From: Octopus vulgaris
Lineage: Eukaryota
Assembly: GCA_951406725.2 (NCBI GenBank)
Contig: OX597842.1
Coordinates: forward strand, 15,686,001-15,750,000
Direction: 5' to 3'
DNA length: 64,000 nt
Shown: positions 1 through 47,518 of the stretch, piece after piece
Position numbering within the stretch: the stretch's first letter is position 1
How the letters are laid out: each line of letters starts with the position of its first letter
Position numbers and translations under genes: made by a program
The notes under the pieces: generated by a model
The model's database searches: none
Told to the model about the DNA's origin: nothing
The model's input: only the letters and a program-made list of their open reading frames with translations

Positions 1-377
1 AGAAAAGGGCGTATGAAACCTCTGGTGCTAAATACACAAACTGAAGTGTTATTCAAGGCAGTTACTCAGCATCGATCTAAAGGTAAACGCCGTACACATT
101 ATACACACATGGTAATATAAATATTATACACACATGATAACAAAATCTTCCTTAGACAGAGACACGTAGTGGATTTGATGTTCCCCTTAATTACCACGAT
201 CTCATATATCTCCTATCTTAAAAGTGGACCCAGACTCACATTCACAAACATCCAAAAACAATAAAATGCATGTATAGAGAGACGGATGTACACCTTAAAT
301 TGAAGTATGGAAAGACATTACGGATTTAGGAAGATATCTTCAGTGAAATAGTATAAAAGAAGATTGATTCAACTTAC

Positions 378-449
378 AGAGTTGTTAAACTGGAGAGATT
401 TTGGAAAGTTTTTTCGTTGATTGCTTGGATATCGTTAAAACTCAAATCC
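378..449 (-). CDS. LRR exon 8 (DLSFNDIQAINEKTFQNLSSLTTL)
   Basis: 72 nt, ttccag / gtaagt, phase 2-2, no stop. Confidence 0.92.
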
Positions 450-6400: not shown

Positions 6401-6582
6401 AAGAAGAACATTTATGGTAAGAAAAAGAAAAAGATGATGAGGAAGAAGTAGATAATGATGATGATGATGATGATGAAGAAGAACAAGAAGAAAAAGAAGA
6501 AGAAGAAGAAGAAGAAGGAAAAGAAGAAGGAGGGGAAGTACAAGAAGATGAAGAAGAATAAGAAGGAGGAGGAGGCGAGGGA

Positions 6583-6614
<32 letters not shown>

Positions 6615-17200: not shown

Positions 17201-20200
17201 TACATACATACACACACATATACATACATACACACATACATACATACATATACATACATACATACACACACACACATACACACACACACAGTATTGAAGC
17301 TTGAGAACAATCAGATACACTTGCAACACATCTGTTGAAAATATTATTGTTCACACACATACATATACATATATACATACAAACAGACAGACAGATAGAC
17401 ACACACACACATGATCCAGCATGGCCACAACCTCAAGGCTGAAACATATAAAAGAATAACAGAATATAAATGTGTGCATGTGTGTGAGAGAGAGAGTGTG
17501 TGTGTATGTATGTATGTATGTATGTATGTATGTATGTATGTATGTATGTATGTATGTATGTATATATATATAATAATGCGGTTTTTTCAACAGCTTGAAC
17601 TAAAAGTCAGAGGAGAATGGGATAAACTACTTATATTAACTTGCTATAAAAGCAGGTAGTAATTTTATCTTGTCCTTATTCATAGTGCAAATTTTGAAGA
17701 GTGCATTTCGATTTTAACAGCTATTTTTTTCAAAGCTATATTGGAACAGCCTAGAAGACGAGCCTCATCCTGAAAGATCTGTAGAACTCGACAAGGACAT
17801 CCTGAAAACCCTGGTGGAACAAAATATCATCGTAACTGTTGAGGAACTAGCAGAGAAGCTTGGATTTGGTCATTCAACCATTCATTGAGACCTGTGTGCT
17901 ATCGGAAAAGTCAGCAAATTGGGTCAATGGGTTCCTCACGAACTTTCCGAGTCTAATTGCATGCAGAGAGTGAATGTATGCTTTTCTTTGCTGTCACATC
18001 TCACCACTACTGCGCTATGTATATCTATATATATAAAACTGTAGTTGTGTGAGTGTCTGTCCCCTTCGATTTAGATTCCTAACTACTCCCACATTTTGCG
18101 GTGCAGTTTAACCAAATTCGGGAAGCTTATAGTCGTGATTCATATCGAGCCCGTCTGAGTATTAGCGCGCGTCTACGATGAGTCTACGATTTTAAAAATA
18201 ACTTAACATCATTTTTTATTCCATTTTAATGCATAATTTTTCGTGTGTCGATGGCGGCGGAGTTGGCGTCCACGCTCACAGCTGCACCTGTGGGGAAGGG
18301 AGTGTAAGGAAATCAACGTCGTAATGCGTTGTCAAGGAGACCAGCGTTCTTTTAGAACAACGACTTCATGGCTTGAAGACACCAAAACAAAAATGGCTAA
18401 GAAAGCGTCTACATGAGTCTACGATTTAAAAAAAAAATTACCATCGTTTTTTTTTCCATTTTAATGCATTTTTTCGCTATTATATAAGGGAAGTAACTCT
18501 CTAAAAATGTCTACGATGAGTCAACGATTTTTCAAAAAATTTACCATCATATTTTTTCCATTTTTAATGCATTTTTTGCTATTTTTGGGCTATAACTCTC
18601 TAAAAATGCTTATATAGTTATTTCCCTTACAAACCCGAGCAACGCCGGGCGATACTGCTAGTTAGAAACTATAGTACATACCCCTTTTGCTAGGTTGAAG
18701 AGAATATAGTATATATCTGTTATAGTATATATCTGTTTCCATTACGTTGTTAGAATTCTTGGTGAGGATATCGAGGAAGGGAAGTTGTTTCTTTGGCATG
18801 AAAATATAGAGAAACTTAAAGAATCCCAAGCACTTCTAAATGGACTTGACTTAAATATTCAATTTATGGTTGAATATAGCCAGCAACACCTTACGTCTCT
18901 CTCATTAACTGAATCCCCGACGAACACTGAGAACGAGAGCGTGTTTTAACGACAAACTACAAAGTGTATACACTATAATCTTTATCAACTACCAACTTCA
19001 ACCACAATCCGATTCCTGTAAGCCATGTGTTAAAGGGTAATATGTCACAAATATGGAAAAATAACTAACACCCGATGCTATATTCAGTAGGAAAGATAAT
19101 ATAAGAGCACGCTTGGAGAAACTAGCAAGTTCATAGCAGAATGCGGTGGAAGGCGTTCCTATTTGATAGAAAGAATATATAAGAGGATAAACCAGCGAAC
19201 ATGGATGCACATTCAGTAAAATCAAGGACAATCCACCGACAAACCAACACATAACCAGGTTCGTGGAGGAAATCTAAGATATATTGGGTCATTCCATAAA
19301 TAATGCGGTTTTTTCAATCGAATGAACTAAAAAGTCGAAGAGTGCAGTTTGGTTTCAACAGTTATTTTTTCAAAGTTATAATGGAAGTGACGGCGTGTCT
19401 TGCTTTATGAGTTCAATAAAGGCAACAACGCAACGGAAAACGTGAGGAATAACAATGCATTATATGGGGATTGGACAATAAGTGTAAGCCAGTGTCAACG
19501 GTGTTTCCAGAAATTCCGAGCCGGAGACTACAGCATAGGTGACGAGCCTCATCTTTGGAGGATCTGTAGAGCTCGACGAAGCGTCCTTCAAACCCTGGGG
19601 GAAAAAATCCCATCCTAACCAGTCAGTAATACCTGCGCTAGAAGAAAAGTGACCATCTTTGATTTCAAGACGAAAGGTGTTCTTCCATCAGGATAATGCT
19701 TAGCCAAGTACAGCAAGGATGACATTTCAAAGACTGGAGCAGTTTCAATAGGAAACGATGCCCCACCCAACATATTTGCCGTCGTTGCACCATCTGATAA
19801 TCATTTATTCCGTAGTCTTTGAAATTATTTGGACAGAAAAAATATGAATTCTATAAACGAGGGCAGAACAGTACTGGGGGAGTATTTTTCATAAGGGGCG
19901 GGCAAGGAAATTTCGGAAGAGGGGCCTTGAAATTCTACAAAATAGATAGAACATTGTAGAAAATGAAGGAGAGTATATTCTATATTAAAAACATTTGTCT
20001 TAGTTTTGAAAGAAAAAGGGAGTATAAAAAAGTGCATTATTTGTGGGATGACTCAATAATCAGAGCATGAAATTCAGAAAGTATCCTCCTAGACAAATGA
20101 TATCTTTTGATAGTAAAATGAAGTTTGGCTTGCTAATTAACTTATAGGAAGATATAATTGTTGTGATGCTATCACTTTTTATTGGTTAATTCATGAGTTC

Positions 20201-23200
20201 TTTTGTCTCTATTAGTCCATTTCGTTATACCTAGTTTTATAACATTTTCATGCTGTTATATATCTATAATTATAGCCATATCGTTATATGTCACTAATTA
20301 CAATAATAATTATATATAACTGATGCTACCGATTCACATATTAATGATAATTTAGAGCTCAGGCATTCAAAGCTGATATTATTTCTGTGTGCATTCTTGT
20401 AATGATGAGTTTTCAGGTTGGCGTGTTGATTAATTTTTTGAATGATGGGCCATATTTTGGGTCACAACCGATTGTGCCCTTTGTTTATCCCCGCGAGAAT
20501 CGATGCGGGATGAAGAAATAATTATAGTTATAAGTCATTTGCATTATTCGGTAGCTTCGTAAAATCTATGTTAGCTAAGTCTAAAAGCGTTAGCGGTAAT
20601 ACACTTCGGAAACTTCATAGAAGTCCCTTTGTCTAGCTTCGTTTCATTGTCACCATTGGTCAATGAATGACTTTCTCACTGAGACTACACCGCTGTCATA
20701 TTGTTTCCCACGGCTTCGCCTGTAACCCTAGATTGAATGGAAGATGGGTGATACGCTGAGCCAAAGGGCAGCTGTGTTTGCGCCAACAAAGTATTTCCTT
20801 ATTTGACGTAATCCCTATATTTAAAGGCTGTTCCATTGTCCACCGCCTGGTAACCTACCGAATAGTAGATACTCACTCAAGATTTACACATTCGCACACA
20901 CATTCATAGCCATCCTTAAATCGCGAGTCGTGCGAGTATGTCTTGGTAACATATCTAATGCTTTTACTAATTGCTTCAGGTGCCGATGTATTTCCGAGCA
21001 GACATAGATACACTTTTATATCTCCAACCCTAACCCTGACCCAGCTGTCACATCCAACACCTGACTGGGAAACATTTACAACTAAGTAGACTGAATCAAC
21101 CTTGATCAACGTCGCAAACACCGAGCTTAGTTCATGAACTGAACCAATCACATTATGATAGAGCAGCGACATGCTAATAACTGTGTCATATCTTTCACAC
21201 ACACTGAGGTACTACAAGTAGAAACTGATACCAACTTCTCAAATGCAGCCCAAATCAATTTTCCCCTCTCATAGTCACAGGATCCACGCTCAAATCATAT
21301 CCAGTGCTATGGCAGTTTTAACAGTCAAAACAGCTCAGCTCAGATTTAATCTATTGGCTGAAGTAAAGTCATAGAGATGGGAACAGATTGCATTAAATGA
21401 TAGAATATCATAAATGCCGGACAAGAAATTCAAAGTTGTCTCTTGAATAAAGTCCAACATCTTTTTACACAAAAATATCTAAAAATCAAATGATTCTGGC
21501 AGCCATAAAGAATACTCTTCTGTTTTCTTTTGATCATGAAGGAAGTCACTTTTGAAGAAGAACATCGCTCTAGGAGAAAGTAGATCCCGTGTATATCTAG
21601 GACTGCATTTAAAAGACTATTATTTTTCATTTTAGAACCAGAAAATATTTCAATCCTAACAACTCCCACTTTTTGATGCTTAAGTAACCAAAGTAAGACC
21701 ACTCTTACATCAGTAATATTAACCGCTATGTTTAGTTATTCATCCTCAGAATATCGGCTTCCGGAATGCCCTCCATGTTCTTGTCTTCTTACCGGTGGGA
21801 ATTTATCTGTAACAATTTAAACGGAGCATTACCATCATCTCTCTCACCCATATCACACAACCAGCGAAATTAATGATCTCTACATCTTCTTCAAAACGCA
21901 GAAAGTAAAAACAAGTGGGATTTGAACTTAAAATGCAAAGAGCTAGAAAATGTCCATACCAGACCAAGTCCCACATCCCTATATTTGTTCTAGTTCAGTG
22001 GCCTCTTTAAGTACGCAAAACTCCGTAATTTAAGGACGTCCTCGGCTGGATTTTAAGTGAGAATACCGACTGCTAGATTAAATACCACAAGGTGTCATTC
22101 AACTCGATGACCTGCAGGTTCGTCAAATTTTTAACTAAATTATGAATTAAAATTTCTAAATAGTATATATCGTATATTCACCATCTGCATATATACCGAT
22201 TTCTATTTTATTCAGACAATCCCAAATGTGTAGAGAAGCAATTAAATTCGCATGAATCGATCGAATATAGTATTGGCATATTTTATTTAAACTGGAAACT
22301 TGAAATATTTAATGCCATATAACTTTTTCTACTGTAGACACAAGACCAGAAACTTTGGTGTAAGGAGAATCGATTAGATCGACCCTAGTACGCAATTGTT
22401 ACTTAATTTATCGACCCCGAAAGGATGAAAGGCAATGTCGACTTCGGCGGAATTTAAGTCAGAACGATTAATGCATTATAATACAAATCCTTTAATCTGA
22501 AATAATACTCAGGAAGAGTCGAACCCTCTCTGTACAATCTAGGATACTTTTCAGTTGAAAAGATCGAGAGATCAGCTAAATCTTAAGCTTAAAGGATTTT
22601 GTAGAATTATAACTAATGTGTTTTTATATCTAAAAAGGTATCGGGTTCATGATATCAACCTAAATTTTACCGATGACGACTTTAATAAAAATAAGTTTCA
22701 TAATACCGGACTATTTTACGTGTTTCATTTACGTAATTTCAGAGTCAGGCAATTTAAGCGGATCTCGTAATTATCTGCAGTTTAATTAGTCTAACAATAT
22801 CACTTTTAATTGTAAACGTAATATAGACATGCAATAATTAACTGTCATTCTGTTACTAAATCAGCTAATATCAATATAACTGTAACAATAAACATCTTCT
22901 ATTTAGGAAATGATGTTGCGAAATGCGGCACCCGGGGGGCAGCCCAGCAAGCAGATTTGATTAAAGTGGAAGAAGTAGGCATACCCGGCCGGATTATTTG
23001 CGTAATGTGGTTCTTCGTTGCCAGGTTCAAGTCGACTACTCACATGGCATCATTACACCGATTTCTTTGCTGCCAAATCCACACTGTATGCCATTCTTCG
23101 TCGTCTGACCTCACACCAACTGTTCACATAACCCAACTCTCATCTCTAACTCTTCCCATCGCCCAACACTTATCCGATTTTTAATTACCTACAAGGGTCT

Positions 23201-26200
23201 AACATAGACGGACAATACGCACATTTGGGGATAATAAACATATGAAAGAACAGAAGAAGAAGAAAAAGAAGAAATGGAAGAAGAAGAAGAAGAAGAAGAA
23301 GAAGAAGGAGAAAAATGAGGAAGAGCAGAACGATAAGATGTAGAAGAAGAGAAAGAAAAACGAGAATGGTAGGACAAAAACAACATCAAATCAACAACAT
23401 TAAAACAATAATAGAGGAAGTAGAAGAAGAAAACGGAGACGAAGAATATGTAGATGGAGATAATAACTAATATGATGAAAGGAAGGAAACGAAAATGACG
23501 AAAAGAAGAAGAAGACGAAGAAAAAGAGGAGGAGTGAGAAGAAGAAGAGCAAGGAAGTGGAGGAGGAGGTAATGAAGATGAAGTGGAAGTAGAAGTCAAA
23601 GAAGAAGAGGAAGGAGATGAAGAATAAGTCGGAGAAGAAAAGAAGAAGAAAGGAACAAGAATAAGTACAAGAAGAATTTTATAAATGAGTTTTATAAATG
23701 ATGTAGTTCTAAATGTACAAATGCCATCGGTATTGAAGCATGTTATTTAGCGTAAACACCAGACATAATATCCATACCGAATGATAGACACAGGTGAATA
23801 GGGATTTGTATGTTTCATAGTGATGATGAACATGGTGTTGATGCTGATGATGTTGGTGGTGAAGTTTCTCTTGTCGATGATGATGAACATATAATACCGT
23901 GTGAAAGGAAAATGACGAGAGTGAGCGAAATTACAAACATGGAAATATATCGTCAATGATATACTATAAATGAAGATTGATTTAACTTACAGTTCATATA
24001 AATTGGTCAAATATTGGAAGGTTTCTGGTTGGATTTCTTTCAGGTTATTATTGTTCAAATACCTGGAACATGAAATTGAGTCAAGATAAAACTTTATGGA
24101 ACAAGCATGTGGTTGTATATAACATATTCCAAGTAAGGAATTAGACTATGGAAATCATGAAGAGTTGATTACGGTTCTGTTGAAATTGATAATGACGATG
24201 ATGATGATGTTCAAGTGGGTGCAACTAACTGCGGTAGGATATGGTAATGAATGAACTTGATGATAAAGCTAACTTATTGCGGTAGTGTGTGGTAATGAAT
24301 GAAGTTAATGATAAAGGTAATGATGAGCCTGACAATATTGAAAACTGAGAGAAAGAAAAGTGTTGCGGATAATAATGTCGGTAATGATGATGGGAACGAA
24401 GAAATTGATAATGAATGAGAAGTAAATGAAAATCGGTAAGAAGGAGAATAAGAAAATATAGAAGAAAAATATGAAGATGACGAAAAAGTAGACGAAATGG
24501 AATATAAATAAGAATGATTAGAAATGAAGAACGACGAAGAAGAAGAAAATGAAGAAAAAGTAGAGCAGGAAGATACGAAGTAGAAGAAGAGAAAGAAAAA
24601 GAAGAATGTTAGCACAAAATCAACATCAAATCAACAACATTAAAAACAATAATTAGAAGAAGTAGAGAGAGAGAAAGAATATACAGATGGAGAAGATAAC
24701 TAAAATGATGAAACGAAGAAAAGGAAAATGATGAAAAGTAGAAGAAGGAGAAGAAGAAGAAGAAGAAGAAGATGAAGAAGAAGAAAAAGGAGAAGAAGGG
24801 GAATTAGTGTATGAATAATATACTTCTAAATATAGAATTACATGTAATATTCAATGATGTGAATTAGCATCGATCTATCGATCTGGAGGTAATCACCGTA
24901 CATAATGTGCATATCGTATTACACTCATATATGAATGCACTTCTTCAGACACAGACGCAAATACATGCATTTGCTGAAAAGTTTCCTCTCAATTCTCACC
25001 CTTTCCTATATGCCATATCTTATACATGGGGCTTCCCACTCTTTAACACACAATTACAGAAAGGTGGAGGATCATATAATCAAGTAAGGGACGATATTAC
25101 AAATATGCAAACATAGCAGCAATGATATACTATAAATAAAAACTGATTTGACTTACAGTATTTTTAAACTGGTCAGGTTTCGGAAGGTTTCAGTTTTCAT
25201 TTGATTCAGAATATTATAGTTCAAACGCCTGGAACATAAAATTGATTTAAGATGAAAATTTATGGAACAGGTTTTTGGAAGTATATAACATATTTCGAGT
25301 AAAGTATTAGACTATGGAAGTCATGAAGAGTTGATTACGGTTCTGTTGAAATTGATAATGATGATGATGATGATGTTCAAATGGGTGCAACTAACTGCGG
25401 TTGTCTATGGTAATGAATAAAGTTGATGATGAACCTGACAATGTTGACGGCTGAGAGAAAGAATCATGTTGCGGAGAATAATCTCAGTAATAATGATGGG
25501 AACGAAGAATGTTTCGGGGACCACTACCCTGGGATGATCATGAAGCAAGCAAGCGTGTGTTTATGCACGCACGAGTGTATGTAAGCATGTGTGTATGTAT
25601 GTGTTTTTCTGTATGCACGTGTGTGTTACCTCAATAGTTGAACATGAAGAACGAAGAATATTACATCTTCATAATTTATTTGTTGAAGCATTTTCTTCAT
25701 ATCACATTCATTGGTTAATCAGCCCAAGATTTCCTCAAGATGCTAAAAAGTACCTGCTCGTATTTCAAATTCCTATTCCATTACGTTACATATGTGTGTG
25801 TGTGTGGCTGTGTGTATATATGTATGTATATGCATATGTACATACGAGGGGATACACAAAAGTAACCGTAAATCTTCTCTGTAAGACAAACCCCCTTGTA
25901 GTTCAGGTTTCCGTCGATAAACTCCACTTGATGCGACTGTCAGGCATCAGTCAGCCAACCGGCGTTATCCGCTAGTGTTGTACTGCCGCGTAGTTCGTCT
26001 TTGTTTTGACGTGTTTCTGCTCAGTTCGTATGATTTTTGCAATGGCTGGAACGAAGGAACATTGTGCTTCTGTGAAATTCTGTTTACTGCTGCTGAAAAC
26101 TGCAGATGAAACAATTCTCATGCATCCCATCACAAGGATGATGCAATGGGCAAAGCACAAGTTTATGAATGGTTTTCTCGATTTAGGAATGGTCACTTGT

Positions 26201-29200
26201 CGCTTGAAAACCAACCTCATTCATGACAACCGTCGACCTCCCAAACATCATGAAAATTCATGATCTGATCCTGGAGGACTGTCACTGAGCAATTGATGAA
26301 CTTGTTGACATGTCAGTTTTGTCCTCGAGCTCCTGGCAATGAAGTTTGTGCGAGGAATTGTGAATGAAAAGCGTTCAAGCAAAATCTGTGCCTTGTTTGC
26401 TCACGGAATGTCAAAAACAGTCACGGCTGAATGCGTGTCGTTAGCTAGAATAACGGTTATGAGGTAATCCGAAAGTTTTTTCGAAGGTCATCACTGGTGA
26501 CGAAAGCTAGTACTACGGAATTTGAAGATGTTGAAGTAAGGAAAGAAATCGATGGGGGCGTTAAAAAGCATCACTTTGGAATAGGTCCAACACGGATTCC
26601 AGTAGCTGAAAAGGCGACAGGAACGTTGCATTGATTAAAAGGGAGAATTCTTTGAACACAATAAGAGTGTAAATATGTAAAACTAAGTGAATAATGTAAG
26701 GTATAACAGCCATCTCAATATGGCTAACAACAAAGTGGGGGTGTTACTGTAGCTTTTAGCCCCAGGAGATCGACGTCTCCAGCTGGCTTTAGACACACTT
26801 TCTGTGTCCTTTAGGTATTTGCAAAGGGAAGACATCCCTTCCTCGTAAGTCTCATCGTTTCCTTATATTTTGTGTAAACCGTTGTTTAAAAGATGCCAAG
26901 ACGCAAAAAATCCTCAGTTTGTCTGTGAATGTTAATTCACTGAGAATTGTAAATAAACAGAACATAAGTAAAATCTAAAATACACTTTACTTTTATATTT
27001 ATATTTTCTGTGGTAAATGTTTTTATAACATACGCTACACATTTTCAAAGTATCTTTAAAGTAATTGTTTTTCTAACAAGTCAACTTTTACAATGACTAA
27101 CGTAGTGCTTGAATTATACAACGTTCTTATTTCGCCCTTGGTTGCAGACAAGTGGTGAAGATCTCACATTTGATATTTAGGATGTCGGCTGGCAAGCTAA
27201 GACTTCATAGTTTTTATCTTACAGAATATGGCTTATTGTACTCTGTACCTTATATATCTTCGCCTTTGCAACTATACAACACATAACAAGGTTTTCTACA
27301 CTCACAACCCTTTAATTACTAGATTTATTTTGATTGTGAAATGATGTAAAGGCTTGCTGATCATCATCTTGTAGGGAAGATTTGATAATTGTATTTTTAT
27401 CACTTTTCGTTAGTCAATTCATGAGTCGTTTTGCCTTTATTGGTCCATTTCGTTAAACCTAGTTTTATTACACTTTCATGCTATTATATATATATATATA
27501 TATAATTATAGACATATCGTTATAACTCACTAATTACAATAATAATTATACATAACTGATGCTACCGATTCACATATTAATGATAATTTAGAGCTCAGGC
27601 ATTCAAAGCTGATATTATTTCTGTTTTCTTGCATTTTTTGGAATAAAGAGTTTTCAGGTTGACGCTGTTGATTAATTTTTTGAATGATGGGCCATATTTT
27701 GGGCCACAACCGATTGGGCCCTTTGTTTATCCCCGCAAGAATCGATGCCAGATGAAGAAATAATTATAGTTATAAGTCATCTGCATTATTCGGTAGCTTC
27801 ATAACATCTATGTTAGCTAAGTCTAAAAGCGTTAGCGGTAATACATTTCGGAAACTACATAGAAGCCCCTTTGTCTAGCATCGTATCATTGTCACCATTG
27901 GCCAATGGATGACTTTCTCACTGAGACTACACCGCTGTCATATTACTTCCCATGGTTTCGCCTGTAAACGTAGACTGAGTGGAAGATGGGTGATACGCTG
28001 AGCCAAAGGGCAGCTGTGTTTGCGCCAACAAAGTATTTCCTTATTTGACGTAATCCCTATATTCAAAGGATGTTCCATTGTCCACCGCCTGGTAAACTAC
28101 CGTATAGTAGATTCTCACTCAAGATTTACACATTCACACACACACATTCATCGCCATCCTTAATTCGCGAGTCGAGCGAGTATGTCTTGGCAACATATCT
28201 AATGCTTTTACTAATTGCTTCAGGTGCCAATGTATTTCCGAGCAGTCATAGATACTCTTTTATGTCTCCAACGCTAAACCTAACACAGATGTCGCATCCA
28301 ACATTTGACTGGTACACATTTACAGCTGAGTAGACTGGATCAATCCTGATCAAAGTCCCAAACACCGAGATTAGTTCAAGAACTGAACCAATCACATTAT
28401 GATCGTGCAGCGACATGCTAATCACTGTGTCATATCTTTCACACACACTGACGTACTACAAGTAGAAACTGATACCAACATCTCAAATGCAGCCCAAAAC
28501 AATTTTCCCTCTCATCAACAAGTCACTGGATCCACACTCAAATCATATCCAGTGCTATGGCAGTTTTAACAGTCAAAACATTTCAGCTCAGATTTAATCT
28601 ATTGGCTGAGGCTAAAGTCGCAGAGATGGGAACAGATTGCAAAAAATGATAGAATATCATAAAATGCCTTACAAGAAATTCAAATTTGTATCTTGAATAA
28701 AGTCCAACACCTTTTCACACAAAAACATCAAAAAATCAAAGGATTCTGGCAGCCATAAAGAATTCTCTTCTGTTTTCTTTTGATCATGAAGGAAGCCACT
28801 TTTGAAGAAGTACATCACTGTGGGAGAATGTAGATCCCGTGTATATCTAGGACGGAATTTAAAAGACATTTTTTTTTTATGGGAATCAGAAAATATTTCA
28901 TCCCTCAACAACTCCCACTTTTTGACGCTCAAGTAACCAAAGTAAGACCACTCTTTTTATTAACATTCCTTCAGTAATATTAACCGCTATGTTTAGTTCT
29001 GCATCCTCAGAACATCCGCTTCTGGAATCCCCTCTACGTTCTTGTCTTCTATCCTGCGGGAATTTATCTGTAACAATTTAAACGGAGCATTACCATCCTC
29101 ACTCTCACCCATATCACACAACCAGCGAAATTAATGAGCTCTACTCCTTCTTCAAAACGCAAATTTGAAGTGGGATTTGAACTTAAAATGCAGAGAGCTA

Positions 29201-32200
29201 GAAAATTTACATACGGGACCCAGTCCGACATCCCTACACTCTGTCTAGTCCACTGGCCTCTTTAGGTACGCAAAAAGCCGTACGTTAAGGACGACCTCGG
29301 CTAGATTTTAAGTCTGAATACCGAATGCTATATTAAATACCAAAAGGTGTCATTCAACTCGGCAGCTTGCAGGTTCGGCCAATTTTTGATTAAATTATGA
29401 ATTAAAATTAAGAAAATTTAAAATTTCTAAACAATATATATCGTATATTCACCATCTGCAAATATATGGATTTCTATTTAATTCAGACAATCCCAAATGT
29501 GTAGAGAAGCAAGCGAATTCGCTTGAATCGATCGAATATAGTATTGGAATATTTTATTTAAATTGGAAACTTGAAATATTTAGTGCCATATAACTTTTTC
29601 TACTGTAGACACAAGACCAGAAATTTTGGAGGAAGGTGAGTCGATTAGATCGGCCCTAGTACGCAATTGTTACTTAATTTATCGTCCCCGAAAGGATGAA
29701 AGGCAAAGTCGACTTCGGCGGAATTTTAAGTAAGAACGATTAATGCAATATAATACAAATCCTTTAATCTGAAATAATACTCAGGAAGAGTCGAACCCAC
29801 TCTGTACAATCTACGGTACTTTTCAGTTGAACTGTAACAGAGAGATCAACTAAATCTTAAGCTTAAAGAATTTTGTAGAATTATAACTAATGTGTTTTTA
29901 TTTCTAAAAACCTATCGGGTTTATGATATCAACCTAAATTTTACCGATGACGACTTTAATAAAAATAAGTTTCATAATACCGGACTATTTTACACGTTTC
30001 ATTTACCCAATTTCAGAGTCAGGCAATTTAAGCTGATCTCGTAATTATCTGCAGTTTAATTAGTCTAACAATATCACTTTTAATTATAAACGTAATATAG
30101 TACAGCAATAATTAACTGTCATTCTGTTACTAAATCAGCTAATATCAATATAACTGTAACAACAAACATTTTAAATTTAGGAAATGATGTTGCGAAATGC
30201 GGCACCCGGGGGGCAGCCCACCAAGCCAATTTGATAAAATTGGAGGAAGTAGGCATAACCGGCCGGATTATTTTCGTAATGTGGTTCTTCGTTGCCAGGT
30301 TCTTGGTCGTCTGACCTCAAACCAACTGTTCACATCAGCCAACTCTCATCTCGAACTCTTCCCATCGCCCAACTCTTATCCGATTTTAATTACCAACAGG
30401 GGTTTAACATAGACGGACAATACGCACATTTGGGGACAATTATCATATGAAAGAACAGAAGAAGAAGTAGAAGAAGGAGGAGAAGAAGAAGAAGAAGAAA
30501 TGGAAGAAGAAGAAGAAGAAGAAGAAGAAGAAGAAGAAGAAGAAGAAGAAGAAGAAAAATGTGAAAGTGCAGGACGATAGGATGTGGAAGAAGAGAAAGA
30601 AAAACAAGGATGGTAGGACAAGAACAACATCAAATCAACAACATTAAAACAATAAGTAGAGGAAGTGTAGAAGAAAAAGAAAACGGAGACGAAGAATATG
30701 TAGAAGGAGATAATAACTAATATGATGAAAGGAAGGAAACGAAAATGACGAAAAGAAGAAGAAGAAAAAGAGGAGGAGTAAGAAGAAGAAGAGCAAGGAA
30801 GTGCAGGAGGAGGTAATGAAGATGAAGTGGAAGTAGAAGTTAAAGAAGAAGAGAAGGAGGTGAAATAAGTAGGAGAAGAAGAGAAGAAGAAAGGAACAAG
30901 AATAAGTTCAAGAAGAATTTTATAAATGAGTTTTATAAATGACGTTGTTCTAAATGTACAAATGCCATCGGTATTGAAGCATGTTATTTAGCGTAAACAC
31001 CAGACATAATATCCATACCGAATGATAGACACAGGTGAATAGGGATTTGTATGTTCATAGTGATGATGAACATGGTGTTGATGCTGATGATGTTGGTGGT
31101 GAAGTTTCTCTTGTCGATGATGATGAACATATAATACCGTGTGAAAGGAAAATGACGAGAGTGAGCGAAATTACAAACATGGAAATATATCGGCAATGAT
31201 ATACTACAAATGAAGATTGATTTAACTTACAGATACTTTAAATTGGTCAAATATTGGAAGGTTTCTGGTTGGATTTCTTTCAGGTTATTATTGTTCAAAT
31301 ACCTGGAACATGAAATTGAGTCAAGATAAAACTTTATGGAACAAGCATGTGGTTGTATATAACATATTTCGAGTAAGGAATTAGACTATGGAAATCATGA
31401 AGAGTTGATTACGGTTCTGTTGAAATTGATAATGACGATGATGATGATGTTCAAGTGGGTGCAACTAACTGCGGTAGGATATGGTAATGAATGAACTTGA
31501 TGATAAAGCTAACTTATTGCGGTAGTGTGTGGTAATGAATGAAGTTAATGATAAAGGTAATGATGAGCCTGACAATATTGAAAACTGAGAGAAAGAAAAG
31601 TGTTGCGGATAATAATGTCGGTAATGATGATGGGAACGAAGAAATTGATAATGAATGAGAAGTAAATGAAAATCGGTAAGAAGGAGAATAAGAAAATATA
31701 GAAGAAAAATATGAAGATGACGAAAAAGTAGACGAAATGGAATATAAATAAGAATGATTAGAAATGAAGAACGACGAAGAAGAAGAAAAAGAAGAAAAAG
31801 TAGAGCAGGAAGATACGAAGTAGAAGAAGAGAAAGAAAAAGAAGAATGTTAGCACAAAATCAACATCAAATCAACAACATTAAAAACAATAATTAGAAGA
31901 AGTAGAGAGAGAGAAAGAATATACAGATGGAGAAGATAACTAAAATGATGAAACGAAGAAAAGGAAAATGATGAAAAGTAGAAGAAGGAGAAGAAGAAGA
32001 AGAAGAAGAAGAAGAAGAAGAAGAAGAAGAAGAAGAAGAAGAAGAAGAAGATGAAGAAGAAGAAAAAGGAGAAGAAGGATAATTAGTGTATGAATAATAT
32101 ACTTCTAAATATAGAATTACATGTAATATTCAATGATGTGAATTAGCATCGATCTATCGATCTGGAGGTAATCACCGTACATAATGTGCATATCGTATTA

Positions 32201-35200
32201 CACTCATATATGAATGCACTTCTTCAGACACAGACGCAAATACATGCATTTGCTGAAAAGTTTCCTCTCAATTCTCACCCTTTCCTATATGCCATATCAT
32301 ATACATGGGGCTTCCCACTCTTTAACACACAATTACAGAAAGGTGGAGGATCATATAATCAAGTAAGGGACGATATTACAAATATGCAAACATAGCAGCA
32401 ATGTTATACTATAAATAAAAACTGATTTGACTTACAGTAGTTTTAAACTGGGCAGGTTTCTGAAGGTTTCAGGTTTTATAACATTCAGATTATTATTGTT
32501 CAAATATCTGGAACATAAAATTGATTTAAGATGAAAATTTATGGGACAGGTTTTTGGAAGTATATAACATATTTCGAGTAAAGAATTAGACTATGGAAAT
32601 CATGAAGAGTTGATTACGGTTCTGTTGAAATTGATAATGATGATGATGATGATGTTCAAATTTGTGCAACTAACTGCGGTTGTCTATGGTAATGAATAAA
32701 GTTGATGATGAACCTGACAATGTTGACGGCTGAGAGAAAGAATAGTGTTGCGGAGAACAGTCTCGGTAATGATGATGGGAACGAAGAACGTTTCGGGGAC
32801 CACTACCCTGGGATGATCATGAAGCAAGCAAGCGTGTGTTTATGCACGCACGAGTGTATGTAAGCATGTGTGTATGTATGTGTGTTTCTGTATGCGTGTG
32901 TGTGTTAACTCAATAGTTGAACATGAAGAACGAAGAATATTACATCTTCATAATTTATTTGTTGAAGCATTTTCTTCATATCACATTCATTGGTTAATCA
33001 GCCCAAGATTTCCTCAGGGTGCTAAAAAGTACCTGCTCGGATTTCAAATCCCTATTCCATTACGTTACATATGTGTGTGTGTGTGGCTCTGTATATATAT
33101 GTATGTATATGCATATGTATATACGAGGGGATATACTAAAGTAACCGTAAATGTTCTCTGTAAGACCAACCCGTTGTAGTTCAGGTTTCCGTCGCTAAAC
33201 TCCAATTGATGCGACTGTCAGGCATCAGTCAGCCAACCGGTGTTATCCGCTAGTGTTGTACTGCCGCGTAGTTCGTCTTTGTTTTGACGTGTTTCTGCTC
33301 AGTTCGTATGTTTTTTGCAATGGCTGGAACGAAGGAACATTGTGCTTCTGTGAAATTCTGTTTACTGCTGCTGAAAACTGCAGATGAAACAGTTTTCATG
33401 CATCCCATCACAACGATGATGCAATGGGCAAAGCACAAGTTTATGAATGGTTTTCTCGATTTAGGAATGGTCACTTGTCGCTTGAAAACCAACCTCATTC
33501 ATGACAACCGTCGACCTCCCAAACATCATGAAAATTCATGATCTGATCCTGGAGGACTGTCACTGAGCAATTGATGAACTTGTTGACATGTCAGTTTTGT
33601 CCTCGAGCTCCTGGCAATGAAGTTTGTGCGAGGAATTGTGAATGAAAAGCGTTCAAGCAAAATCTGTGCCTTGTTTGCTCACGGAATGTCAAAAACAGTC
33701 ACGGCTGAATGCGTGTCGTGAGCTAGAAGAACTGTTATGAGGTAATCCGAATGTTTTTCCGAAGGTCATCAGTGGTGACGAAAGCTGGTACTACGGAATT
33801 TGAAGATGTGGAAGTGAGGAAAGAAATCGATGGGGGCATTAAAAAGCATCACTTCGGAATATGTCCAACACGGATTCCAGTAGCTGAAAAGGCGCTTGGA
33901 ACGATGCATTGATTAAAATGGAGAATACTTTGAACACAAAAAAAGTGTATATATGTAAAACTAAGTGAATAATATAATATTTCAAAATTACGGTTTCTTT
34001 TGGGCACTCCGTCGTAAGTATGTACACACAAGCGGCTAAGGCCGAGCTTCCCTGGGATTATTAATACCTAAAATAGATATCATCTCATCATTTCCTTATT
34101 TTTGGGGTAAACTGTTGTTTAAAAGATGCCAAGACGCAAAAAATCCTCAGTTTGTCTGTGAATGTTAATTCACTGAGAATTGTAAATAAACAGAACATAA
34201 GTAAAATCTAAAATACACTTTACTTTTATATTTATATTTTCTGTGGTAAATGTTTTTATAACATACGCTACACATTTTCAAAGTATCTTTAAAGTAATTG
34301 TTTTTCTAACAAGTCAACTTTTACAATGACTAACGTAGTGCTTGAATTATACAACGTTCTTATTTCGCCCTTGGTTGCAGACAAGTGGTGAAGATCTCAC
34401 ATTTGATATTTAGGATGTCGGCTGGCAAGCTAAGACTTCATAGTTTTATCTTACAGAATATGGCTTTTTGTACTCTGTACCTTATATATCTTCGCCTTTG
34501 CAACTATACAACACATAACAAGGTTTTCTACACTCACAACCCTTTAATTACTAGATTTATTTTGATTGTGAAATGATGTAAAGGCTTGCTGATCATCATC
34601 TTGTAGGGAAGATTTGATAATTGTATTTTTATCACTTTTCGTTAGTCAATTCATGAGTCGTTTTGCATTTATTGGTCCATTTCGTTAAACCTAGTTTTAT
34701 TACACTTTCATGCTATTATATATATATAATTATAGCCAGATCGTTATATGTCCCTAATTACAATAATAATTATACATAAATGATGCTACCGATTCACATA
34801 GTAATGATAATTTAGAGCTCAGGCATTCAAAGCTGATATTATTTCTGTTTTCTTGCATTTTTTGGAATTACGAGTTTTCAGGTTGGCGCTGTTGATTAAT
34901 TTTTTGAATGATGGGCCATATTTTGGGCCACAACCGGTTGAGCCCTTTGTTTATCCCCGCAAGAATCGATGCCAGATGAAGAAATAATTATAGTTATAAG
35001 TCATTTGCATTATTCGGTAGCTTCATAACATCTATGTTAGCTAAGTCTAAAAGCGTTAGCGGTAATACATTTCGGAAACTACATAGAAGCCCCTTTGTCT
35101 AGCTTCGTATCATTGTCACCATTGGCCAATGGATGACTTTCTCACTGAGACTACACCGCTGTCATAGTGTTTCCCACGGCTTCGCCTGTAACCGTAGACT

Positions 35201-38200
35201 GAGTGGAAGATGGGTGATACGCTGAGCCAAAGGGCAGCTGTGTTTGCGCCAACAAAGTATTTCCTTATTTGACGTAATCCCTATATTCAAAGAATGTTCT
35301 ATTGTCCACCACCTGGTAAACTACCGAATAGTAGATTCTCACTGAAGATTTACACATTCGCACACACATATTCGTAGCCATCCTTAATTCGCGAGTCGAA
35401 CGAGTATGTCTTGGCAACATATCTAATGCTTTTACTAATTGCTTCAGGTGCCTAAGTATTTCCGAGCAGACATAGGTACTCTTTTATGTCTCCAACGCTA
35501 AACCTAACCCAGATGTCGCATCCAACACTTGACTGGTACACATTTACAGCTGAGTAGACTGGATGAATCCTGATCAACGTCCCAAACACCGAGCGTAGTT
35601 CAAGAACTGAACCAATCACATTATGATCGTGCAGCGACATGCTAATCACTGTGTCATATCTTTCACACACACTGAGGTACTACAAGTAGAAACTGATACC
35701 AACAGCTCAAATGCTGGATCCACGCTCAAATCACATCTAGTGCTATGGCAGTTTTAACAGTCAAAACATATCAGCTCAGATTTAATCTATTGGGTGAGGC
35801 TAAAGTCGCAGAGATGGGAACAGATTGCAAAAAATGATAGAATATCATAAAATGCCTGACAAGAAATTCAAAGTTGTCTCTTGAATAAAGTCCAACACCT
35901 TTTCACACAAAAACATCTAAAAATCAAATGATTCTGGCAGCCATAAATAATTCTCTTCTGTTTTCTTTGTGTCATGAAGGAAGTCACTTTTGAAGAAGAA
36001 CATCACTATAGGAGAAAGTAGATCCCGTGTATATCTAGGACGGAATTTAAAAGACATTTTTTTTCATTTTAGAACCAGAAAATATTTCGATCCTAGCAAC
36101 TTCCACTTTTTGACGCTCATGTAACCAAAGTAAGACCACTCTTTTTATTAACATTCCCTCAGTAATATTAACCGCTATGTTTAGTTCTTCATCCTCAGAA
36201 CATCGGATTCTGGAATGTCCTCCATGTTCTCGTCTTCTTTCCGGGAATTTATCTGTAACATTTTTAAACGGAGCATTACCATCATCACTCTCACCCATAT
36301 CACACAACCAGCGAAATTAATGAGCTCTACTCCTTCTTCAAAACGCAGAAAGTAAAAACAAGTGGGATTTGAACTTAAAATACAAAGAGCTAGAAGATTT
36401 CCATACGAGACCCAGTCCGACATCTCTACACCATGTCTAGACCACTGGCCTCTTTAAGTACGCAAACCGCCGTACGGTAAGGATGTCCTCGGCTAGATTT
36501 TAAGTCAGAATACCGAATGTTAGATTAGATACCACAAGGTGTCATTCAACTCGACGGCCTGCAGGTTTGGCCAATTTTTGACTAATTATGAATTAAAATT
36601 ATGAAAATTAAAAATGTCTAAATAATATATATCGTATATTCACCATCTGCAGATATACGGATTTCTATTTAATTCAGACAATCACAAATGTGTAGAGAAG
36701 CAAGTGAATTCGCTTGAATCGATCGAATATAGTATTGGAATATTTTATTTAAACTGGAAACTTGAAATGTTTAATGCAATATAATCTGTTCTACCGAAAA
36801 TTTGGGGGAGGGTGAATCGATTAGATCGACCCTAGTACGCAACTGGTATTTAATTTGCCGACCCCGAATGGATGAAAGGCAAAGTCGACTTCGGCGAAAT
36901 TTGAAGTCATAACGATTAATGCAATATAATACAAATCCTTTAATCTGAAATGATACTCAGGAAGAGTCGAACCCACTCTGTACGATCTAGGGTACTTTTC
37001 AGTTGAACTGTAACAAACAGAGCAGCTAAATCTTAAGCTTAAAGAATTTTGTAGAATTATAAATAATGTGTTTTTATTTCTAAAAACCTATCGGGTTTAT
37101 GATATCAACCTAAATTTTACCGATGGCGTCTTTAATGAAAATAGGTTTCATAATACCGTACTATTTTACATGTTTCATTTACCCAATTTCAGAGTCAGGC
37201 AATTTAAGCGGATCTCGTAATTATCTGCCGTTTAATAAGTCTAACAATATCACTTTTAATTATAAACGTAATATAGTACAGCAAAAATTAACTGTCATTC
37301 TGTTACTAAATCAGCTAATATCAATATAACTGTAACAATAAACATTTTAAGTTTAGGAAATGATGTTGCGAAATGCGGCACCCGGGGGTAGCCCAGCAAG
37401 CCAATCTGATAAAATTGGAGGAAGTAGGCATACCCGGCTGGATTATTTGCGTAATTAGGTTCTTCGTTGCCAGGTTCACTTCGACTGGTCACATTGCATC
37501 TTTACAAATCCACACTGTAATCAGTTCTTCGTTGTCTGAAGAACTCACACCAGCTGTTCACATCACCCAACTCTCATCCCTAACTCTTCCCATCGCCCAA
37601 CTCTTATCCGATTTTTAATTACCCACAGGGGTCTAACATAGACGTACAATACGCACATTTGGGGACAATTAACATATGAAAGAACAGGAAAAAAAGGAAA
37701 CTTTACAAATGAAGTTGGAACGTCTATCCCGACCGCGCTCCAGGATGGTCACGTTATTTCAATTACGTCATCTTTAAAATCAATCTGCACTTAATACTTT
37801 ATGTTACTTTTAATGTCCTCATAGTTCACCACTGTATCGCTGGGTTCGATGCTCCCCTCGGGTCCCAGTGCGTTTACAACTGAAGGGAATACATCTTTAA
37901 GCGTTCTATATTTGTCTTTCTCCATCAGGACACAATCTTTTTCGTAACCTTCCGAAAGGATCAATCTAACAATCCCTTTCCTTTCTGTTATTCTCCTTTC
38001 AAAATTTTGGGGTCGTACGATATGTTATTCAAAATAACGTGTTCCTGTGGACCTCTTCTGTCTGTATGTCTGTTCTTAATGTCTTTGTTACTCTGTGTTA
38101 TCATGCGTCCGTCTATGTTTCTTTGTGTCTGTGTGTCTATGTGCTTATGTGTCTGTAAGTCTGTGTGTTTGTGTGATTGTAAGTCTGTACATTTGCTTGG

Positions 38201-47050: not shown

Positions 47051-47390
47051 ATATCAGAATGGGACCGCCACACACAGCGTAGATGGAGCGGAGCAAGCAA
47101 TCTAATGCTGTGGTCATGGAGTGTTACTAACAGAGCAGCCCGGTAGAATAAAAATGGAGCTCAAATTAGGGGTTACCGACGACGTATGTATGATCATTGT
47201 AGAGAAAAGTGATTGTTCCAACTAACGGAACAGATACTATGAGATCAAGCTACAGTAATAAGAAAAAAATCGTTGGTTCACAGAGGTGGAGCTCGAAGCT
47301 ATATAAGAGACGGGTCTTGGAAAATAGCAGCAGAGATAGCAATGAAAATTATTATTATTATTATTTTTTTTTTTATTATTATTATTATTA

Positions 47391-47518
<128 letters not shown>

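What the first reader, a model, noticed from the sequence alone, without database searches (positions are those of the whole stretch)
25157..32507. Duplicate exon diverges ~18% while its flanking introns are ~97% identical
Seen: LRR exons 1 and 3 occupy the same position in the 7.2 kb duplicate and differ at 13 of 72 nt, giving 8 amino-acid changes (Y/R, N/Y, N/I, V/Q, I/M, P/T, P/T, L/I). Only 2 differences are silent. Flanks differ at about 1 of 76 nt (donor side) and 3 of ~100 nt (acceptor side). This inverts the usual exon>intron conservation. Over four duplicate comparisons (8v6, 6v5, 4v2, 3v1) I count 21 nt differences, 19 in amino-acid-changing codons. Inference: diversifying selection or exon-targeted conversion/mutation.
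Basis: partly seen in the sequence, partly recalled or inferred. Interest (0 to 1): 0.82.

Follow-up and report, generated by a model that had tools for sequence, protein, structure and literature searches.

The report
Hypervariable LRR cassette exons, octopus receptor
Two recently duplicated 72-base exons of an octopus leucine-rich-repeat receptor gene differ nine times more than the introns around them. Across the gene family, the fast-changing codons are those that line the predicted ligand-binding face, a known evolutionary pattern seen here in a new animal gene family.

Summary
Exons at 25157-25228 and 32436-32507 (minus strand) differ at 13 of 72 nt: 8 amino-acid changes and 2 silent. 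The flanks within 1 kb either side differ at 2.0% (Fisher p = 1e-8).

The exons are cassettes 3 and 1 of one gene. It has a signal-peptide + LRRNT exon at 40042-39860, then at least 22 LRR exons. All are 72 nt, phase 1, and share the donor CT|GTAAGT. They are spread over 140 kb. Cys-rich exons follow, as in octopus proteins that RefSeq names "adhesion GPCR G6-like". The genome holds at least 49 such first exons.

- dN/dS is 1.2 for this pair and 1.8 pooled over the four comparisons (p = 0.38).
- Two of the four exon pairs diverge less than their introns.
- The left third of the 7.2-kb unit is 9% diverged, with non-exonic peaks as high as the exon's.

The family gives the stronger signal. In 15 sister cassettes, the x positions 2, 3, 5, 7 and 8 of LxxLxLxxNxL have pN 0.54. 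The rest of the exon has pS 0.034 and the introns differ by 0.10.

Best reading: selection for diversity on the ligand-binding face, in an array kept similar by tandem duplication and patchy homogenisation. This is a new member of a known kind.

The parts
39860..40042 (-). First coding exon: signal peptide plus Cys-rich LRRNT-like cap (MFQQLKLTFVLILSMSFCLESHAVSDICSICRCYDSQTRISCYNRRLTLIPQPIPPNVEF). It ends TT|GTAAGT in phase 1.
   Evidence: tblastn with O. sinensis P0003/P0014 gives 80% and 72% identity; sequence read. It is the only such exon in 264 kb.
32436..32507 (-). LRR cassette E1 (YLNNNNLNVIKPETFRNLPSLKL), lineage b, in unit B.
31231..31302 (-). LRR cassette E2 (YLNNNNLKEIQPETFQYLTNLKY), lineage a, in unit B.
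25157..25228 (-). LRR cassette E3 (RLNYNILNQMKTETFRNLTSLKI), lineage b, in unit A. It is the positional duplicate of E1 and differs from it at 13 of 72 nt.
23991..24062 (-). LRR cassette E4 (YLNNNNLKEIQPETFQYLTNLYE), the duplicate of E2. The 4 differences all fall in exon nt 64-69 (LRR positions x2 and x3).
6309..6380 (-). LRR cassette E5 (DLSYNDIQAINENTFQSLSSLKT), lineage c.
4420..4491 (-). LRR cassette E6 (DLSFNDIQAINEKTFQNLSSLKT), lineage c.
2866..2937 (-). LRR cassette E7 (NLRDNNIQEIKVGTFQNLSSLTE). Its 472-nt module is identical to another copy 5.8 kb downstream, outside the window.
378..449 (-). LRR cassette E8 (DLSFNDIQAINEKTFQNLSSLTT). The array continues beyond the left end of the window.
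20099..27321 (.). Tandem unit A (7.2 kb, carrying E3 and E4). The left part 20099-23300 is about 9% diverged from unit B. The exon-bearing part 23695-26655 is 1-4% diverged.
27322..34553 (.). Tandem unit B (7.2 kb, carrying E1 and E2).
34554..37700 (.). Partial third unit C. It has the left part only and no LRR exon.
26700..26850 (.). Non-homologous replaced block between units A and B (counterpart about 33980-34083). This is a non-exonic divergence peak of a different nature.
1..7713 (.). Second intragenic tandem array of 1.9-4 kb units carrying E5-E8. Here the exons are as conserved as their introns or more so.

Best explanation
The two exons are neighbouring cassettes of a germline array. 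Each 72-nt exon encodes one 24-residue leucine-rich repeat, in the ectodomain of an octopus-lineage receptor. The gene has a signal peptide, an LRRNT-like cap, at least 22 LRRs, an LRRCT-like cap and Cys-rich modules. Its paralogues are annotated as adhesion-GPCR-like.

The array grows by tandem duplication of multi-kb units. Parts of the units are later re-homogenised, by unequal crossing-over or gene conversion. This keeps the introns and the scaffold-coding part of each exon nearly identical between copies.

Against that background, selection favours or maintains amino-acid differences at the solvent-exposed x positions of the LxxLxLxxNxL beta-strand, which forms the concave ligand-binding face. 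Those codons sit at the two ends of every cassette exon. A duplicated exon can therefore be far more diverged than its introns.

Shown here: the anatomy, the exon-limited excess, the position-specific hypervariability, and the mosaic identity of the units. Inferred: that selection is the cause, that the concave face binds ligand, and that the gene is expressed as a receptor.

For the E1/E3 pair, two histories cannot be separated. The differences may have arisen after a recent duplication. Or they may be older differences that escaped homogenisation of the flanks.
For: Local excess: 13/72 against 40/1999 in the flanks, p = 1e-8. It is still in excess against the oldest-looking part of the unit (287/3125, p = 0.015).

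Family, 19 modules aligned: intron pi is 0.07-0.10, exon pi is 0.21, and pi reaches 0.5-0.73 at exon nt 0-2, 7-12, 18-24 and 64-69.

Nine disjoint nearest-neighbour pairs: pN at the concave codons is 0.346, against intron K of 0.034 (p = 2e-35) and all pS of 0.177 (p = 0.003). pN at the other codons is 0.047.

Lineage a, 15 cassettes: positions 5, 7 and 8 each carry 7-8 different residues. Codons 9-21 are nucleotide-invariant except K/Q at one codon and one synonymous variant. Strand-x pN is 0.54, core pS 0.034, core pN 0.017 and intron K 0.10.

Structure: the AF2 model (pLDDT 74.8) places a strand every 24 residues, covering x3-x8.

Mosaic units: identical runs of 418, 353 and 305 nt, against a maximum of 164 in 1000 permutations.

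Integrity: all 22 modules of the gene have open frames and GT donors.

Literature: positive selection was reported for co-localised octopus-specific adhesion GPCRs, some with LRRs (PMC6408891).
Against: About half of the E1/E3 replacements lie at scaffold positions (13, 14, 16, 23) that are invariant in the other lineage-b cassettes. Two silent changes in about 16 synonymous sites also exceed the flank rate. This pair therefore looks accelerated across the whole exon, not only at binding positions.

The Leu11 codon turns over synonymously inside the hypervariable patch, which amino-acid selection alone does not predict.

The nearest-neighbour pairs were chosen by lowest intron divergence, which biases K downward.

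The cassettes are recombining paralogues, so the pair counts are not independent.

There is no expression, polymorphism or orthologue evidence for this gene. Three conserved Cys are lost in its downstream Cys-rich exons, so this copy may be decaying or may make only short secreted forms.
Confidence: 0.6

Rival explanations
1. Old neutral divergence with homogenised flanks and no selection for diversity. The duplication is as old as the 9% divergence of the left part of the unit. Later gene conversion erased differences in the introns. The already diverged exon stopped heteroduplex extension or fell between tracts, and so kept its differences.
For: The units are a mosaic of 1.0%, 3.7% and 9.2% segments, with identical runs far longer than chance allows. 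Exon pS of 0.158 is near the 9% background. dN/dS is not significantly above 1.
Against: The exon (18%) still exceeds the 9.2% background (p = 0.015). Two tracts would have to stop within a few bases of both splice sites. The family-wide restriction of variability to strand x codons, with a frozen core and frozen introns, needs a position-specific cause. The three-way comparison of the left parts gives no clean conversion or hybrid breakpoint.
Confidence: 0.2
2. Ectopic micro-conversion or exon shuffling. Short patches were copied into E1 or E3 from other cassettes of the family. Those cassettes share near-identical introns, so only the exon patches show as differences.
For: E1 nt 1-17 are identical to the adjacent E2/E4-type exon, and its first 10 nt match cassettes L008 and L014. 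The same 5' and 3' patches recur in different combinations, and two modules (L010, L004) combine the core of one lineage with the flank of another. Differences cluster: GTT against CAA, and AAGTAT against TATGAA. Exon shuffling is documented for 72-nt LRR exons in Ectocarpus (PMC3341825).
Against: Whole-genome searches find no exon more than 87% identical to E1 or E3. At least 9 of the 13 differing states are unique among about 33 sampled cassettes. Core and flank types are otherwise congruent. Conversion only redistributes variation and does not explain where it came from.
Confidence: 0.12
3. Targeted mutational process. A hypermutation-like mechanism, germline or somatic, acts on the cassette exons.
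For: Multi-nucleotide changes within single codons. Synonymous turnover of the Leu11 codon inside the hypervariable patch. Silent changes in E1/E3 above the flank rate.
Against: In lineage a, the synonymous sites of 13 core codons are invariant in 15 copies apart from one variant. The Leu6 codon, which lies between hypervariable codons, has no synonymous variant. An exon-wide or patch-wide mutator would mark these sites. No mutator-associated motif or enzyme was looked for or found.
Confidence: 0.04
4. Assembly artefact. Mis-assembly or collapse of a tandem repeat made the flanks look more alike than they are, or mixed haplotypes.
For: Tandem 7.2-kb repeats rich in microsatellites are hard to assemble. 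Some modules are 100% identical over 472 nt.
Against: Both exons are intact, in frame and carry canonical splice sites. The same exon-against-intron pattern recurs in many independent modules on two chromosomes. The flanks still carry scattered differences.
Confidence: 0.04

Closest known systems
Ectocarpus ROCO / LRR genes with one LRR per 72-nt exon (Zambounis et al. 2012, PMC3341825)
   Same: Each 24-residue LRR is one 72-nt symmetric exon. The exon boundaries match that paper's 'type II' pattern xLxxNxL...LxxL. Both show intragenic duplication and reshuffling of cassettes, high variability in LRR number and sequence, and diversifying selection inferred on the LRR domain.
   Different: Here all 22 modules lie on the coding strand, and no intronic antisense or inactivated cassettes were seen in this gene. 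The host protein is an extracellular receptor of an animal, not a cytosolic ROCO GTPase. Core and flank lineages are mostly congruent, so shuffling looks modest.
Octopus-specific adhesion GPCR expansion, 'group 3' (Ritschard et al. 2019, PMC6408891); RefSeq 'adhesion G-protein coupled receptor G6-like' of O. vulgaris (P0141, P0177)
   Same: The same N-terminal architecture, exon by exon: signal peptide, LRRNT, LRR array, a terminal ...YEDGAFLFLPSI repeat, an LRRCT-like CGCHLPA motif, a Cys-rich module and an HRM-like module. The genes are co-localised in clusters, and positive selection is reported. Annotated isoforms differ by whole LRR cassettes.
   Different: No GAIN/GPS or 7TM exon was located for this gene. 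Three conserved Cys of the downstream modules are replaced. The paper reports LRRs in only 5 of 22 sequences and does not describe the cassette-exon array or its position-specific hypervariability.
Plant R-gene / receptor-like protein LRRs, and lamprey/hagfish VLRs (my own knowledge)
   Same: Hypervariability concentrated on the solvent-exposed x residues of the xxLxLxx beta-strand on the concave face, on a conserved scaffold. The loci are clustered, duplicating and recombining.
   Different: VLR diversity is assembled somatically from cassettes that have no splice sites. Here the cassettes are ordinary exons of a germline gene. Plant LRR domains are usually encoded in one or a few large exons.
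Tandem duplicates with exons more diverged than introns: primate L/M opsins, MHC class I/II (my own knowledge)
   Same: Gene conversion or recombination homogenises the introns, while selection keeps functional exon differences. This gives islands of divergence in near-identical flanks.
   Different: Those cases involve whole genes or alleles. Here the duplicates are cassettes inside one gene, and the islands are 6-12-nt patches at exon ends.
Conus venom peptide genes (my own knowledge)
   Same: A mollusc example of a hypervariable coding segment next to strongly conserved introns and signal sequences.
   Different: That is a secreted toxin with a single hypervariable mature-peptide exon. It is not a repeat scaffold with position-specific variability.

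Membership tests
Leucine-rich repeat proteins (typical 24-residue extracellular LRR; Pfam LRR_8) | Tandem LxxLxLxxNxL-containing repeats recognised by LRR profile models | tested here: met
   The model of exon 0 plus E1-E8 hits LRR_8 at E = 9e-56 (186 bits), and also LRR_4 and LRR_1. AF2 gives a strand every 24 residues.
Extracellular capped LRR proteins (LRRNT / LRRCT) | A signal peptide plus Cys-cluster caps on both sides of the repeats | tested here: inconclusive
   An N-terminal hydrophobic leader and the motif C-x2-C-x-C...C are present. An LRRCT-like exon (CGCHLPALVNY...C...C) lies downstream. The Pfam LRRNT and LRRCT models did not score on this gene. The paralogue P0133 carries PF01462.
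Adhesion GPCRs | A GAIN/GPS autoproteolysis domain followed by a family-B 7TM (PF00002) | tested here: inconclusive
   Paralogues are named ADGRG6-like. 7tm_2 exons lie about 100 kb downstream of first exons on the same strand at C9:114.3 Mb and C10:6.7 Mb. None was listed between this gene's last mapped exon (15564540) and the next first exon (15429951). Only 150 of 422 candidates were scored, and further sequence could not be fetched.
Adhesion GPCRs | A hormone-receptor-motif (HRM) domain in the ectodomain | tested here: inconclusive
   P0141 matches HRM weakly (E = 8e-4, below the cut-off). The homologous exons exist in this gene with one Cys replaced, and they do not score in Pfam.
VLR-type somatically assembled LRR receptors | An incomplete germline gene, flanked by donor cassettes without splice sites that are copied in somatically | tested here: not met
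   Every cassette has the canonical YAG|...|GTAAGT, the same phase and the same strand, downstream of one signal-peptide exon. It is an ordinary multi-exon gene. Somatic change cannot be tested from one assembly.
Dscam-type mutually exclusive cassette splicing | A docking site and selector sequences able to base-pair | tested here: not met
   No complementarity longer than 13 nt between the first intron and the conserved flanks of E1-E7. Only the first intron was searched.
Ectocarpus-type LRR exon shuffling | One repeat per 72-nt symmetric exon | tested here: met
   All 22 modules are 72 nt and phase 1-1.
Ectocarpus-type LRR exon shuffling | Intact or inactivated cassettes on the non-coding strand or within introns | tested here: not met
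   All modules found by motif scan and by flank homology in 264 kb are on the coding strand with open frames. Frameshifted cassettes exist elsewhere in the family (L007, L019).
Concerted evolution with selection-maintained exon differences (opsin / MHC type) | Mosaic tracts of near-identity between duplicates, beyond what chance allows | tested here: met
   Identical runs of 418, 353 and 305 nt against a permutation maximum of 164. Segment divergences range from 1.0% to 9.2%.
Concerted evolution with selection-maintained exon differences (opsin / MHC type) | Paralogous introns more alike within a species than orthologous introns between species | not testable with these tools
   No orthologous octopus genomic sequence could be reached.

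The most novel reading that the evidence does not exclude
The array of at least 22 interchangeable, phase-symmetric LRR cassettes behind a single signal-peptide exon is a diversity generator. Regulated cassette choice would give different cells differently composed LRR ectodomains, in the manner of Dscam or clustered protocadherins. Alternatively, termination after any cassette would give short secreted forms, because every unspliced donor reads CTG-TAA (Leu, then stop). The product would be an adhesion-GPCR-like receptor or a secreted LRR protein, with the hypervariable concave residues as the recognition code. The gene is repeated in at least 49 copies. Annotated isoforms of paralogues that differ by one or three whole cassettes (P0003/P0015/P0051; P0141/P0177) are compatible with this reading.
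Probability: 0.15. Interest if true: 0.85.

Novelty: new member of a known kind. Interest (0 to 1): 0.5.

Why it matters
Cephalopods lack antibody-type adaptive immunity. They are known for lineage-specific expansions of recognition molecules such as protocadherins, GPCRs and chemotactile receptors.

A clustered family of at least 49 genes, whose ectodomains are built from duplicating one-repeat exons, with extreme variability on the predicted binding face, is a strong candidate for a fast-evolving recognition system. Its targets could be pathogens, prey or surface chemistry, self/non-self cues, or neuronal wiring partners.

The one-exon-per-repeat layout makes the evolutionary process unusually easy to read. 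Introns and scaffold codons serve as an internal neutral or constrained reference only tens of bases from the selected codons. The layout also makes cassette-level alternative splicing directly testable with long-read RNA.

For genome annotation, the result shows that short "LRRC4-like" models probably end where an LRR cassette's splice donor is left unspliced. They may be fragments of much larger genes.

Tried and rejected
- Donor search. Whole-genome searches with each 72-nt exon found nothing closer than 86-87%, so simple whole-exon conversion is rejected.
- A-to-I editing. Rejected, because both versions are genomic and only 3 of the 13 differences are A/G.
- Dscam-like docking/selector pairing between the first intron and the cassette flanks. 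Best match 13 nt, E >= 0.017 over 14 queries, so no evidence.
- Regex search for a canonical LRRCT (NPW.C.C) found nothing. The cap was later found by homology to paralogues.
- Pfam on this gene's downstream Cys-rich exons gave no hit.
- Locating the 7TM. The PF00002 genome scan lists none in the expected interval, but it scored only 150 of 422 candidates.
- Three-way comparison of the left parts of units A, B and C, to date the duplication as NAHR between older repeats, gave no clean hybrid breakpoint.
- Orthologue search. Two protein-database searches found only paralogues of 80% identity or less, so no cross-species test was possible.
- Relaxed constraint alone is rejected for E1/E3. It cannot exceed the neutral rate, and the exon is 9 times the flank rate.
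- Exon-wide hypermutation is rejected on the invariant core synonymous sites.
- My first pooled estimate that synonymous sites were 5 times the intron rate was inflated by one cross-lineage pair and by the Leu11 codon. Within lineage a, core pS (0.034) is below intron K.

Full report
**Context.** The window is G000:C29:15686001-15750000 of a 2.8-Gb, 227-contig assembly. It is about 37% G+C and full of microsatellites and retroelement debris. The closest named proteins are from Octopus sinensis, O. vulgaris and O. bimaculoides, so the source is an octopus.

**Checking the observation.** A scan for AG|72 nt|GT with an LRR motif finds eight exons on the minus strand:

| Exon | Window coordinates |
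|---|---|
| E1 | 32436-32507 |
| E2 | 31231-31302 |
| E3 | 25157-25228 |
| E4 | 23991-24062 |
| E5 | 6309-6380 |
| E6 | 4420-4491 |
| E7 | 2866-2937 |
| E8 | 378-449 |

All are 72 nt and phase 1, with a YAG acceptor and a GTAAGT donor.

- E3 and E1 differ at 13 positions.
- E4/E2 differ at 4 positions, E6/E5 at 3 and E8/E6 at 1.
- A global alignment of unit A (20099-27321) with unit B (27322-34553) has 466 mismatches in 7089 aligned columns, or 6.6%.
- Around E3/E1 the flanks differ at 1/100 nt on the donor side and 3/100 on the acceptor side, and at 40/1999 within 1 kb. Fisher p is 1e-8.
- In segment 23301-26655, the exon is the only place where a 72-nt window reaches 13 mismatches.

**Limits of the observation.** The unit is a mosaic:

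| Segment (unit A coordinates) | Divergence from unit B |
|---|---|
| 20099-23300 | 9.2% |
| 23695-25156 | 1.0% |
| 25229-26655 | 3.7% |
| about 26700-26850 | replaced, non-homologous block |
| 26856-27321 | 1.3% |

- In the 9% part, 169 non-exonic windows reach 13 or more mismatches. It is met in the unit as a whole but not in the exon's neighbourhood.
- Identical runs of 418, 353 and 305 nt far exceed the maximum of 164 seen in 1000 permutations. The units have therefore either been partly homogenised or are composites of different ages.
- A three-way comparison with the partial third unit (34554-37700) did not resolve which.
- Against the 9.2% background, the exon is still in excess (p = 0.015).
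- The inversion of exon and intron conservation is clear only for E3/E1. E4/E2 is marginal. For E6/E5 and E8/E6 the exon is less diverged than its flanks.
- Within-exon dN/dS is 1.2 for E3/E1 and 1.8 for the four pairs pooled (p = 0.38). The count of 19 of 21 in amino-acid-changing codons is about what neutrality predicts, because 80% of the sites are nonsynonymous.

**What the exons belong to.**
- A single first exon at 40042-39860 (minus) encodes a signal peptide and a Cys-rich cap. It is 80% identical to O. sinensis "LRRC4-like" proteins and ends in the same phase.
- I fetched 200 kb around the window. This first exon is the only one in 264 kb.
- It is followed by 22 LRR modules, all on the minus strand and all with open frames, down to C29:15585254.
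- Then come exons homologous to an LRRCT-like cap, a Cys-rich (Ly6/uPAR-like by eye) module and an HRM-like module. These match O. vulgaris "adhesion G-protein coupled receptor G6-like" proteins and an O. bimaculoides protein named "toll-like receptor 5".
- Three Cys that are conserved in those paralogues are replaced in this gene.
- Pfam confirms the LRRs (LRR_8, E = 9e-56). In the paralogue it gives only a sub-threshold HRM match.
- I could not locate a 7TM for this gene.
- Genome-wide there are at least 49 such first exons. They lie in clusters on C29, C9, C10, C8, C30, C31 and C2 that also hold family-B 7TM exons.
- This matches the octopus-specific, co-localised, positively selected adhesion-GPCR expansion of Ritschard et al. 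2019, in which some members carry LRRs (PMC6408891).

**The family-wide pattern.** A genome search with the 339-nt module (E3 plus its flanks) finds at least 41 copies on C29 and C9.

- In an alignment of 19 full modules, the introns are strikingly conserved for more than 300 nt upstream and about 40 nt downstream (pi 0.07-0.10).
- The exon has pi 0.21, concentrated at nt 0-2, 7-12, 18-24 and 64-69, where pi is 0.5-0.73.
- Numbering the repeat L1-x2-x3-L4-x5-L6-x7-x8-N9-x10-L11-x12, with the intron falling inside the L4 codon, these are positions 5, 7, 8, 10-12 at the 5' end of each exon and positions 2, 3 of the next repeat at its 3' end.
- An AlphaFold model (pLDDT 74.8) puts a beta-strand every 24 residues over x3-x8. 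In LRR solenoids these strands form the concave face, and the x side chains point into solvent (established structural knowledge).

Modules fall into three lineages by exon core and flanks.

In lineage a (15 cassettes):
- Positions 5, 7 and 8 each carry 7-8 different residues.
- Codons 9-21 are invariant at the nucleotide level, apart from a K/Q site and one synonymous variant.
- Averaged over 105 pairs, strand-x pN is 0.54, core pS 0.034, core pN 0.017 and intron K 0.10.

In nine disjoint nearest-neighbour pairs, concave-codon pN is 0.346. This compares with intron K of 0.034 (p = 2e-35) and pS of 0.177 (p = 0.003). Other codons have pN 0.047.

Lineage c cassettes (E5-E8 and their copies) are conserved like ordinary exons. 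Even there, the few differences fall on x positions.

**The E1/E3 pair in detail.**
- I polarised the differences with the other lineage-b cassettes. About 5 changes are derived in E3 and about 8 in E1.
- At least 9 of the states are unique in the sampled family.
- No exon elsewhere in the genome is more than 87% identical to either exon.
- E1's first 18 nt equal those of the adjacent E2-type exon, so one short conversion is plausible.
- About half of the replacements fall on strand x positions (5, 8, 10, 3). The rest fall on scaffold positions (13, 14, 16, 23) that are invariant in the other lineage-b cassettes.
- Codon 9 of E1 (GTT, against CAA in the others) carries three adjacent changes.

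This pair is more broadly accelerated than the family norm.

**Mechanism.**
- The invariant synonymous sites of the core, 10-40 nt from saturated codons, exclude an exon-wide mutator. They also exclude the idea that whole exons are simply older than their introns.
- Relaxed constraint cannot give 9 times the flank rate.
- The simplest account is selection for amino-acid diversity on the binding face, acting in an array that expands by tandem duplication and is patchily re-homogenised. Occasional short conversions move patches between cassettes.
- For E1/E3, I cannot tell recent change after duplication from older differences that resisted homogenisation. The flank rate (2%) and the left-part rate (9%) bracket the possible age.
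- Some points remain unexplained: the synonymous turnover of the Leu11 codon inside the patch, the clustered multi-nucleotide changes, and core synonymous sites that are more conserved than the introns (notebook).

**Comparison with known systems.**
- The closest analogue in gene structure is the Ectocarpus ROCO/LRR system. It has 72-nt one-repeat exons, the same "type II" boundaries, shuffling and diversifying selection (PMC3341825). Here no antisense or intronic cassettes were found.
- In logic, it resembles plant R-gene LRRs and VLRs (hypervariable concave residues), and opsin/MHC-type exon islands in homogenised introns (my own knowledge).
- It is not VLR-like in mechanism, because the cassettes are ordinary spliced exons.
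- No Dscam-type docking/selector pairing was found.
- Annotated isoforms of paralogues differ by whole cassettes (P0003/P0015/P0051 by one; P0141/P0177 by three), so cassettes can be skipped.
- Every donor reads CT|GTAAGT, so an unspliced donor gives Leu then stop. This explains why the short RefSeq "LRRC4-like" models end in ...L.

**Verdict.**
Conversion plays at most a minor role. Targeted mutation is unlikely.
- This is a new member of a known kind and is of moderate interest. Interest would be high if the array proves to be a splicing-based diversity generator.

Noticed in passing
window 378-7713 and beyond the left end (C29:15678819-15692380): A second intragenic tandem array of nine lineage-c cassettes (DLSFNDIQAINEKTFQNLSSLKT and variants) in 0.9-4 kb units. 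Two 472-nt modules (C29:15683018 and 15688866 = window 2866) are 100% identical. Here the exons are as conserved as their introns or more so, the opposite of E1/E3.
   Followed up: partly
every LRR cassette donor, e.g. window 25151-25158 and 32430-32437: All cassettes end CT|GTAAGT, so an unspliced donor reads CTG TAA (Leu, then stop). The O. sinensis RefSeq 'LRRC4-like' models of 133-157 aa end in ...L at a cassette boundary. They probably stop by reading into the intron, and may be fragments or short secreted isoforms of much larger genes.
   Followed up: partly
outside the window: C29:15572383-15572574 and 15564603-15564656 (minus): In the downstream Cys-rich and HRM-like exons of this gene, three Cys conserved in paralogues are replaced (CCTGNLC becomes CYTGNLG; KCSPFTG becomes KGSPFTG). 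The exon between them (SEA-like region of the paralogues) was not detected. The C-terminal part of this copy may be decaying.
   Followed up: partly
outside the window: C29:15586393-15586464 (minus): A 22nd cassette (YLSYYDIKEIKVDRFRNLSSFTY) has Tyr in place of the conserved Asn9 and a weak GTCAGC donor. It is possibly a dying exon.
   Followed up: no
window 9238-9981 (+), 42226-43047 (+), 44674-46851 (-): Retroelement debris. One ORF has a sub-threshold Exo_endo_phos match (E = 4e-5) and one has a zf-RVT match (E = 3e-5). Three further long ORFs on the minus strand have no Pfam hit.
   Followed up: partly
window 47348-47573, 54187-54700, 55176-55483: Long AAT/ATT-type microsatellite arrays related to each other in inverted orientation. 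G+C drops to 27% at 54-56 kb.
   Followed up: no
window 481-800, 3520-4070, 4510-4830, 6420-6670, 23250-23680, 30450-30920, 31680-32080, 42390-42555: Purine-rich (GA/GAA-type) low-complexity tracts recur in the introns of the array. They give GC skew up to +0.43 and cross-match each other at 73-88%.
   Followed up: no
loci L007 (C29:14588112) and L019 (C29:14502256): Family members with frameshifted cassettes: two 1-nt deletions in L007 and a 1-nt insertion before the donor in L019. Their intron flanks are conserved, so some cassettes are pseudo-exons.
   Followed up: no
window 26700-26850 v 33980-34083: A block of about 150 nt in unit A is replaced by an unrelated block of about 105 nt in unit B, in the middle of otherwise 96-99% identical sequence.
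   Followed up: partly
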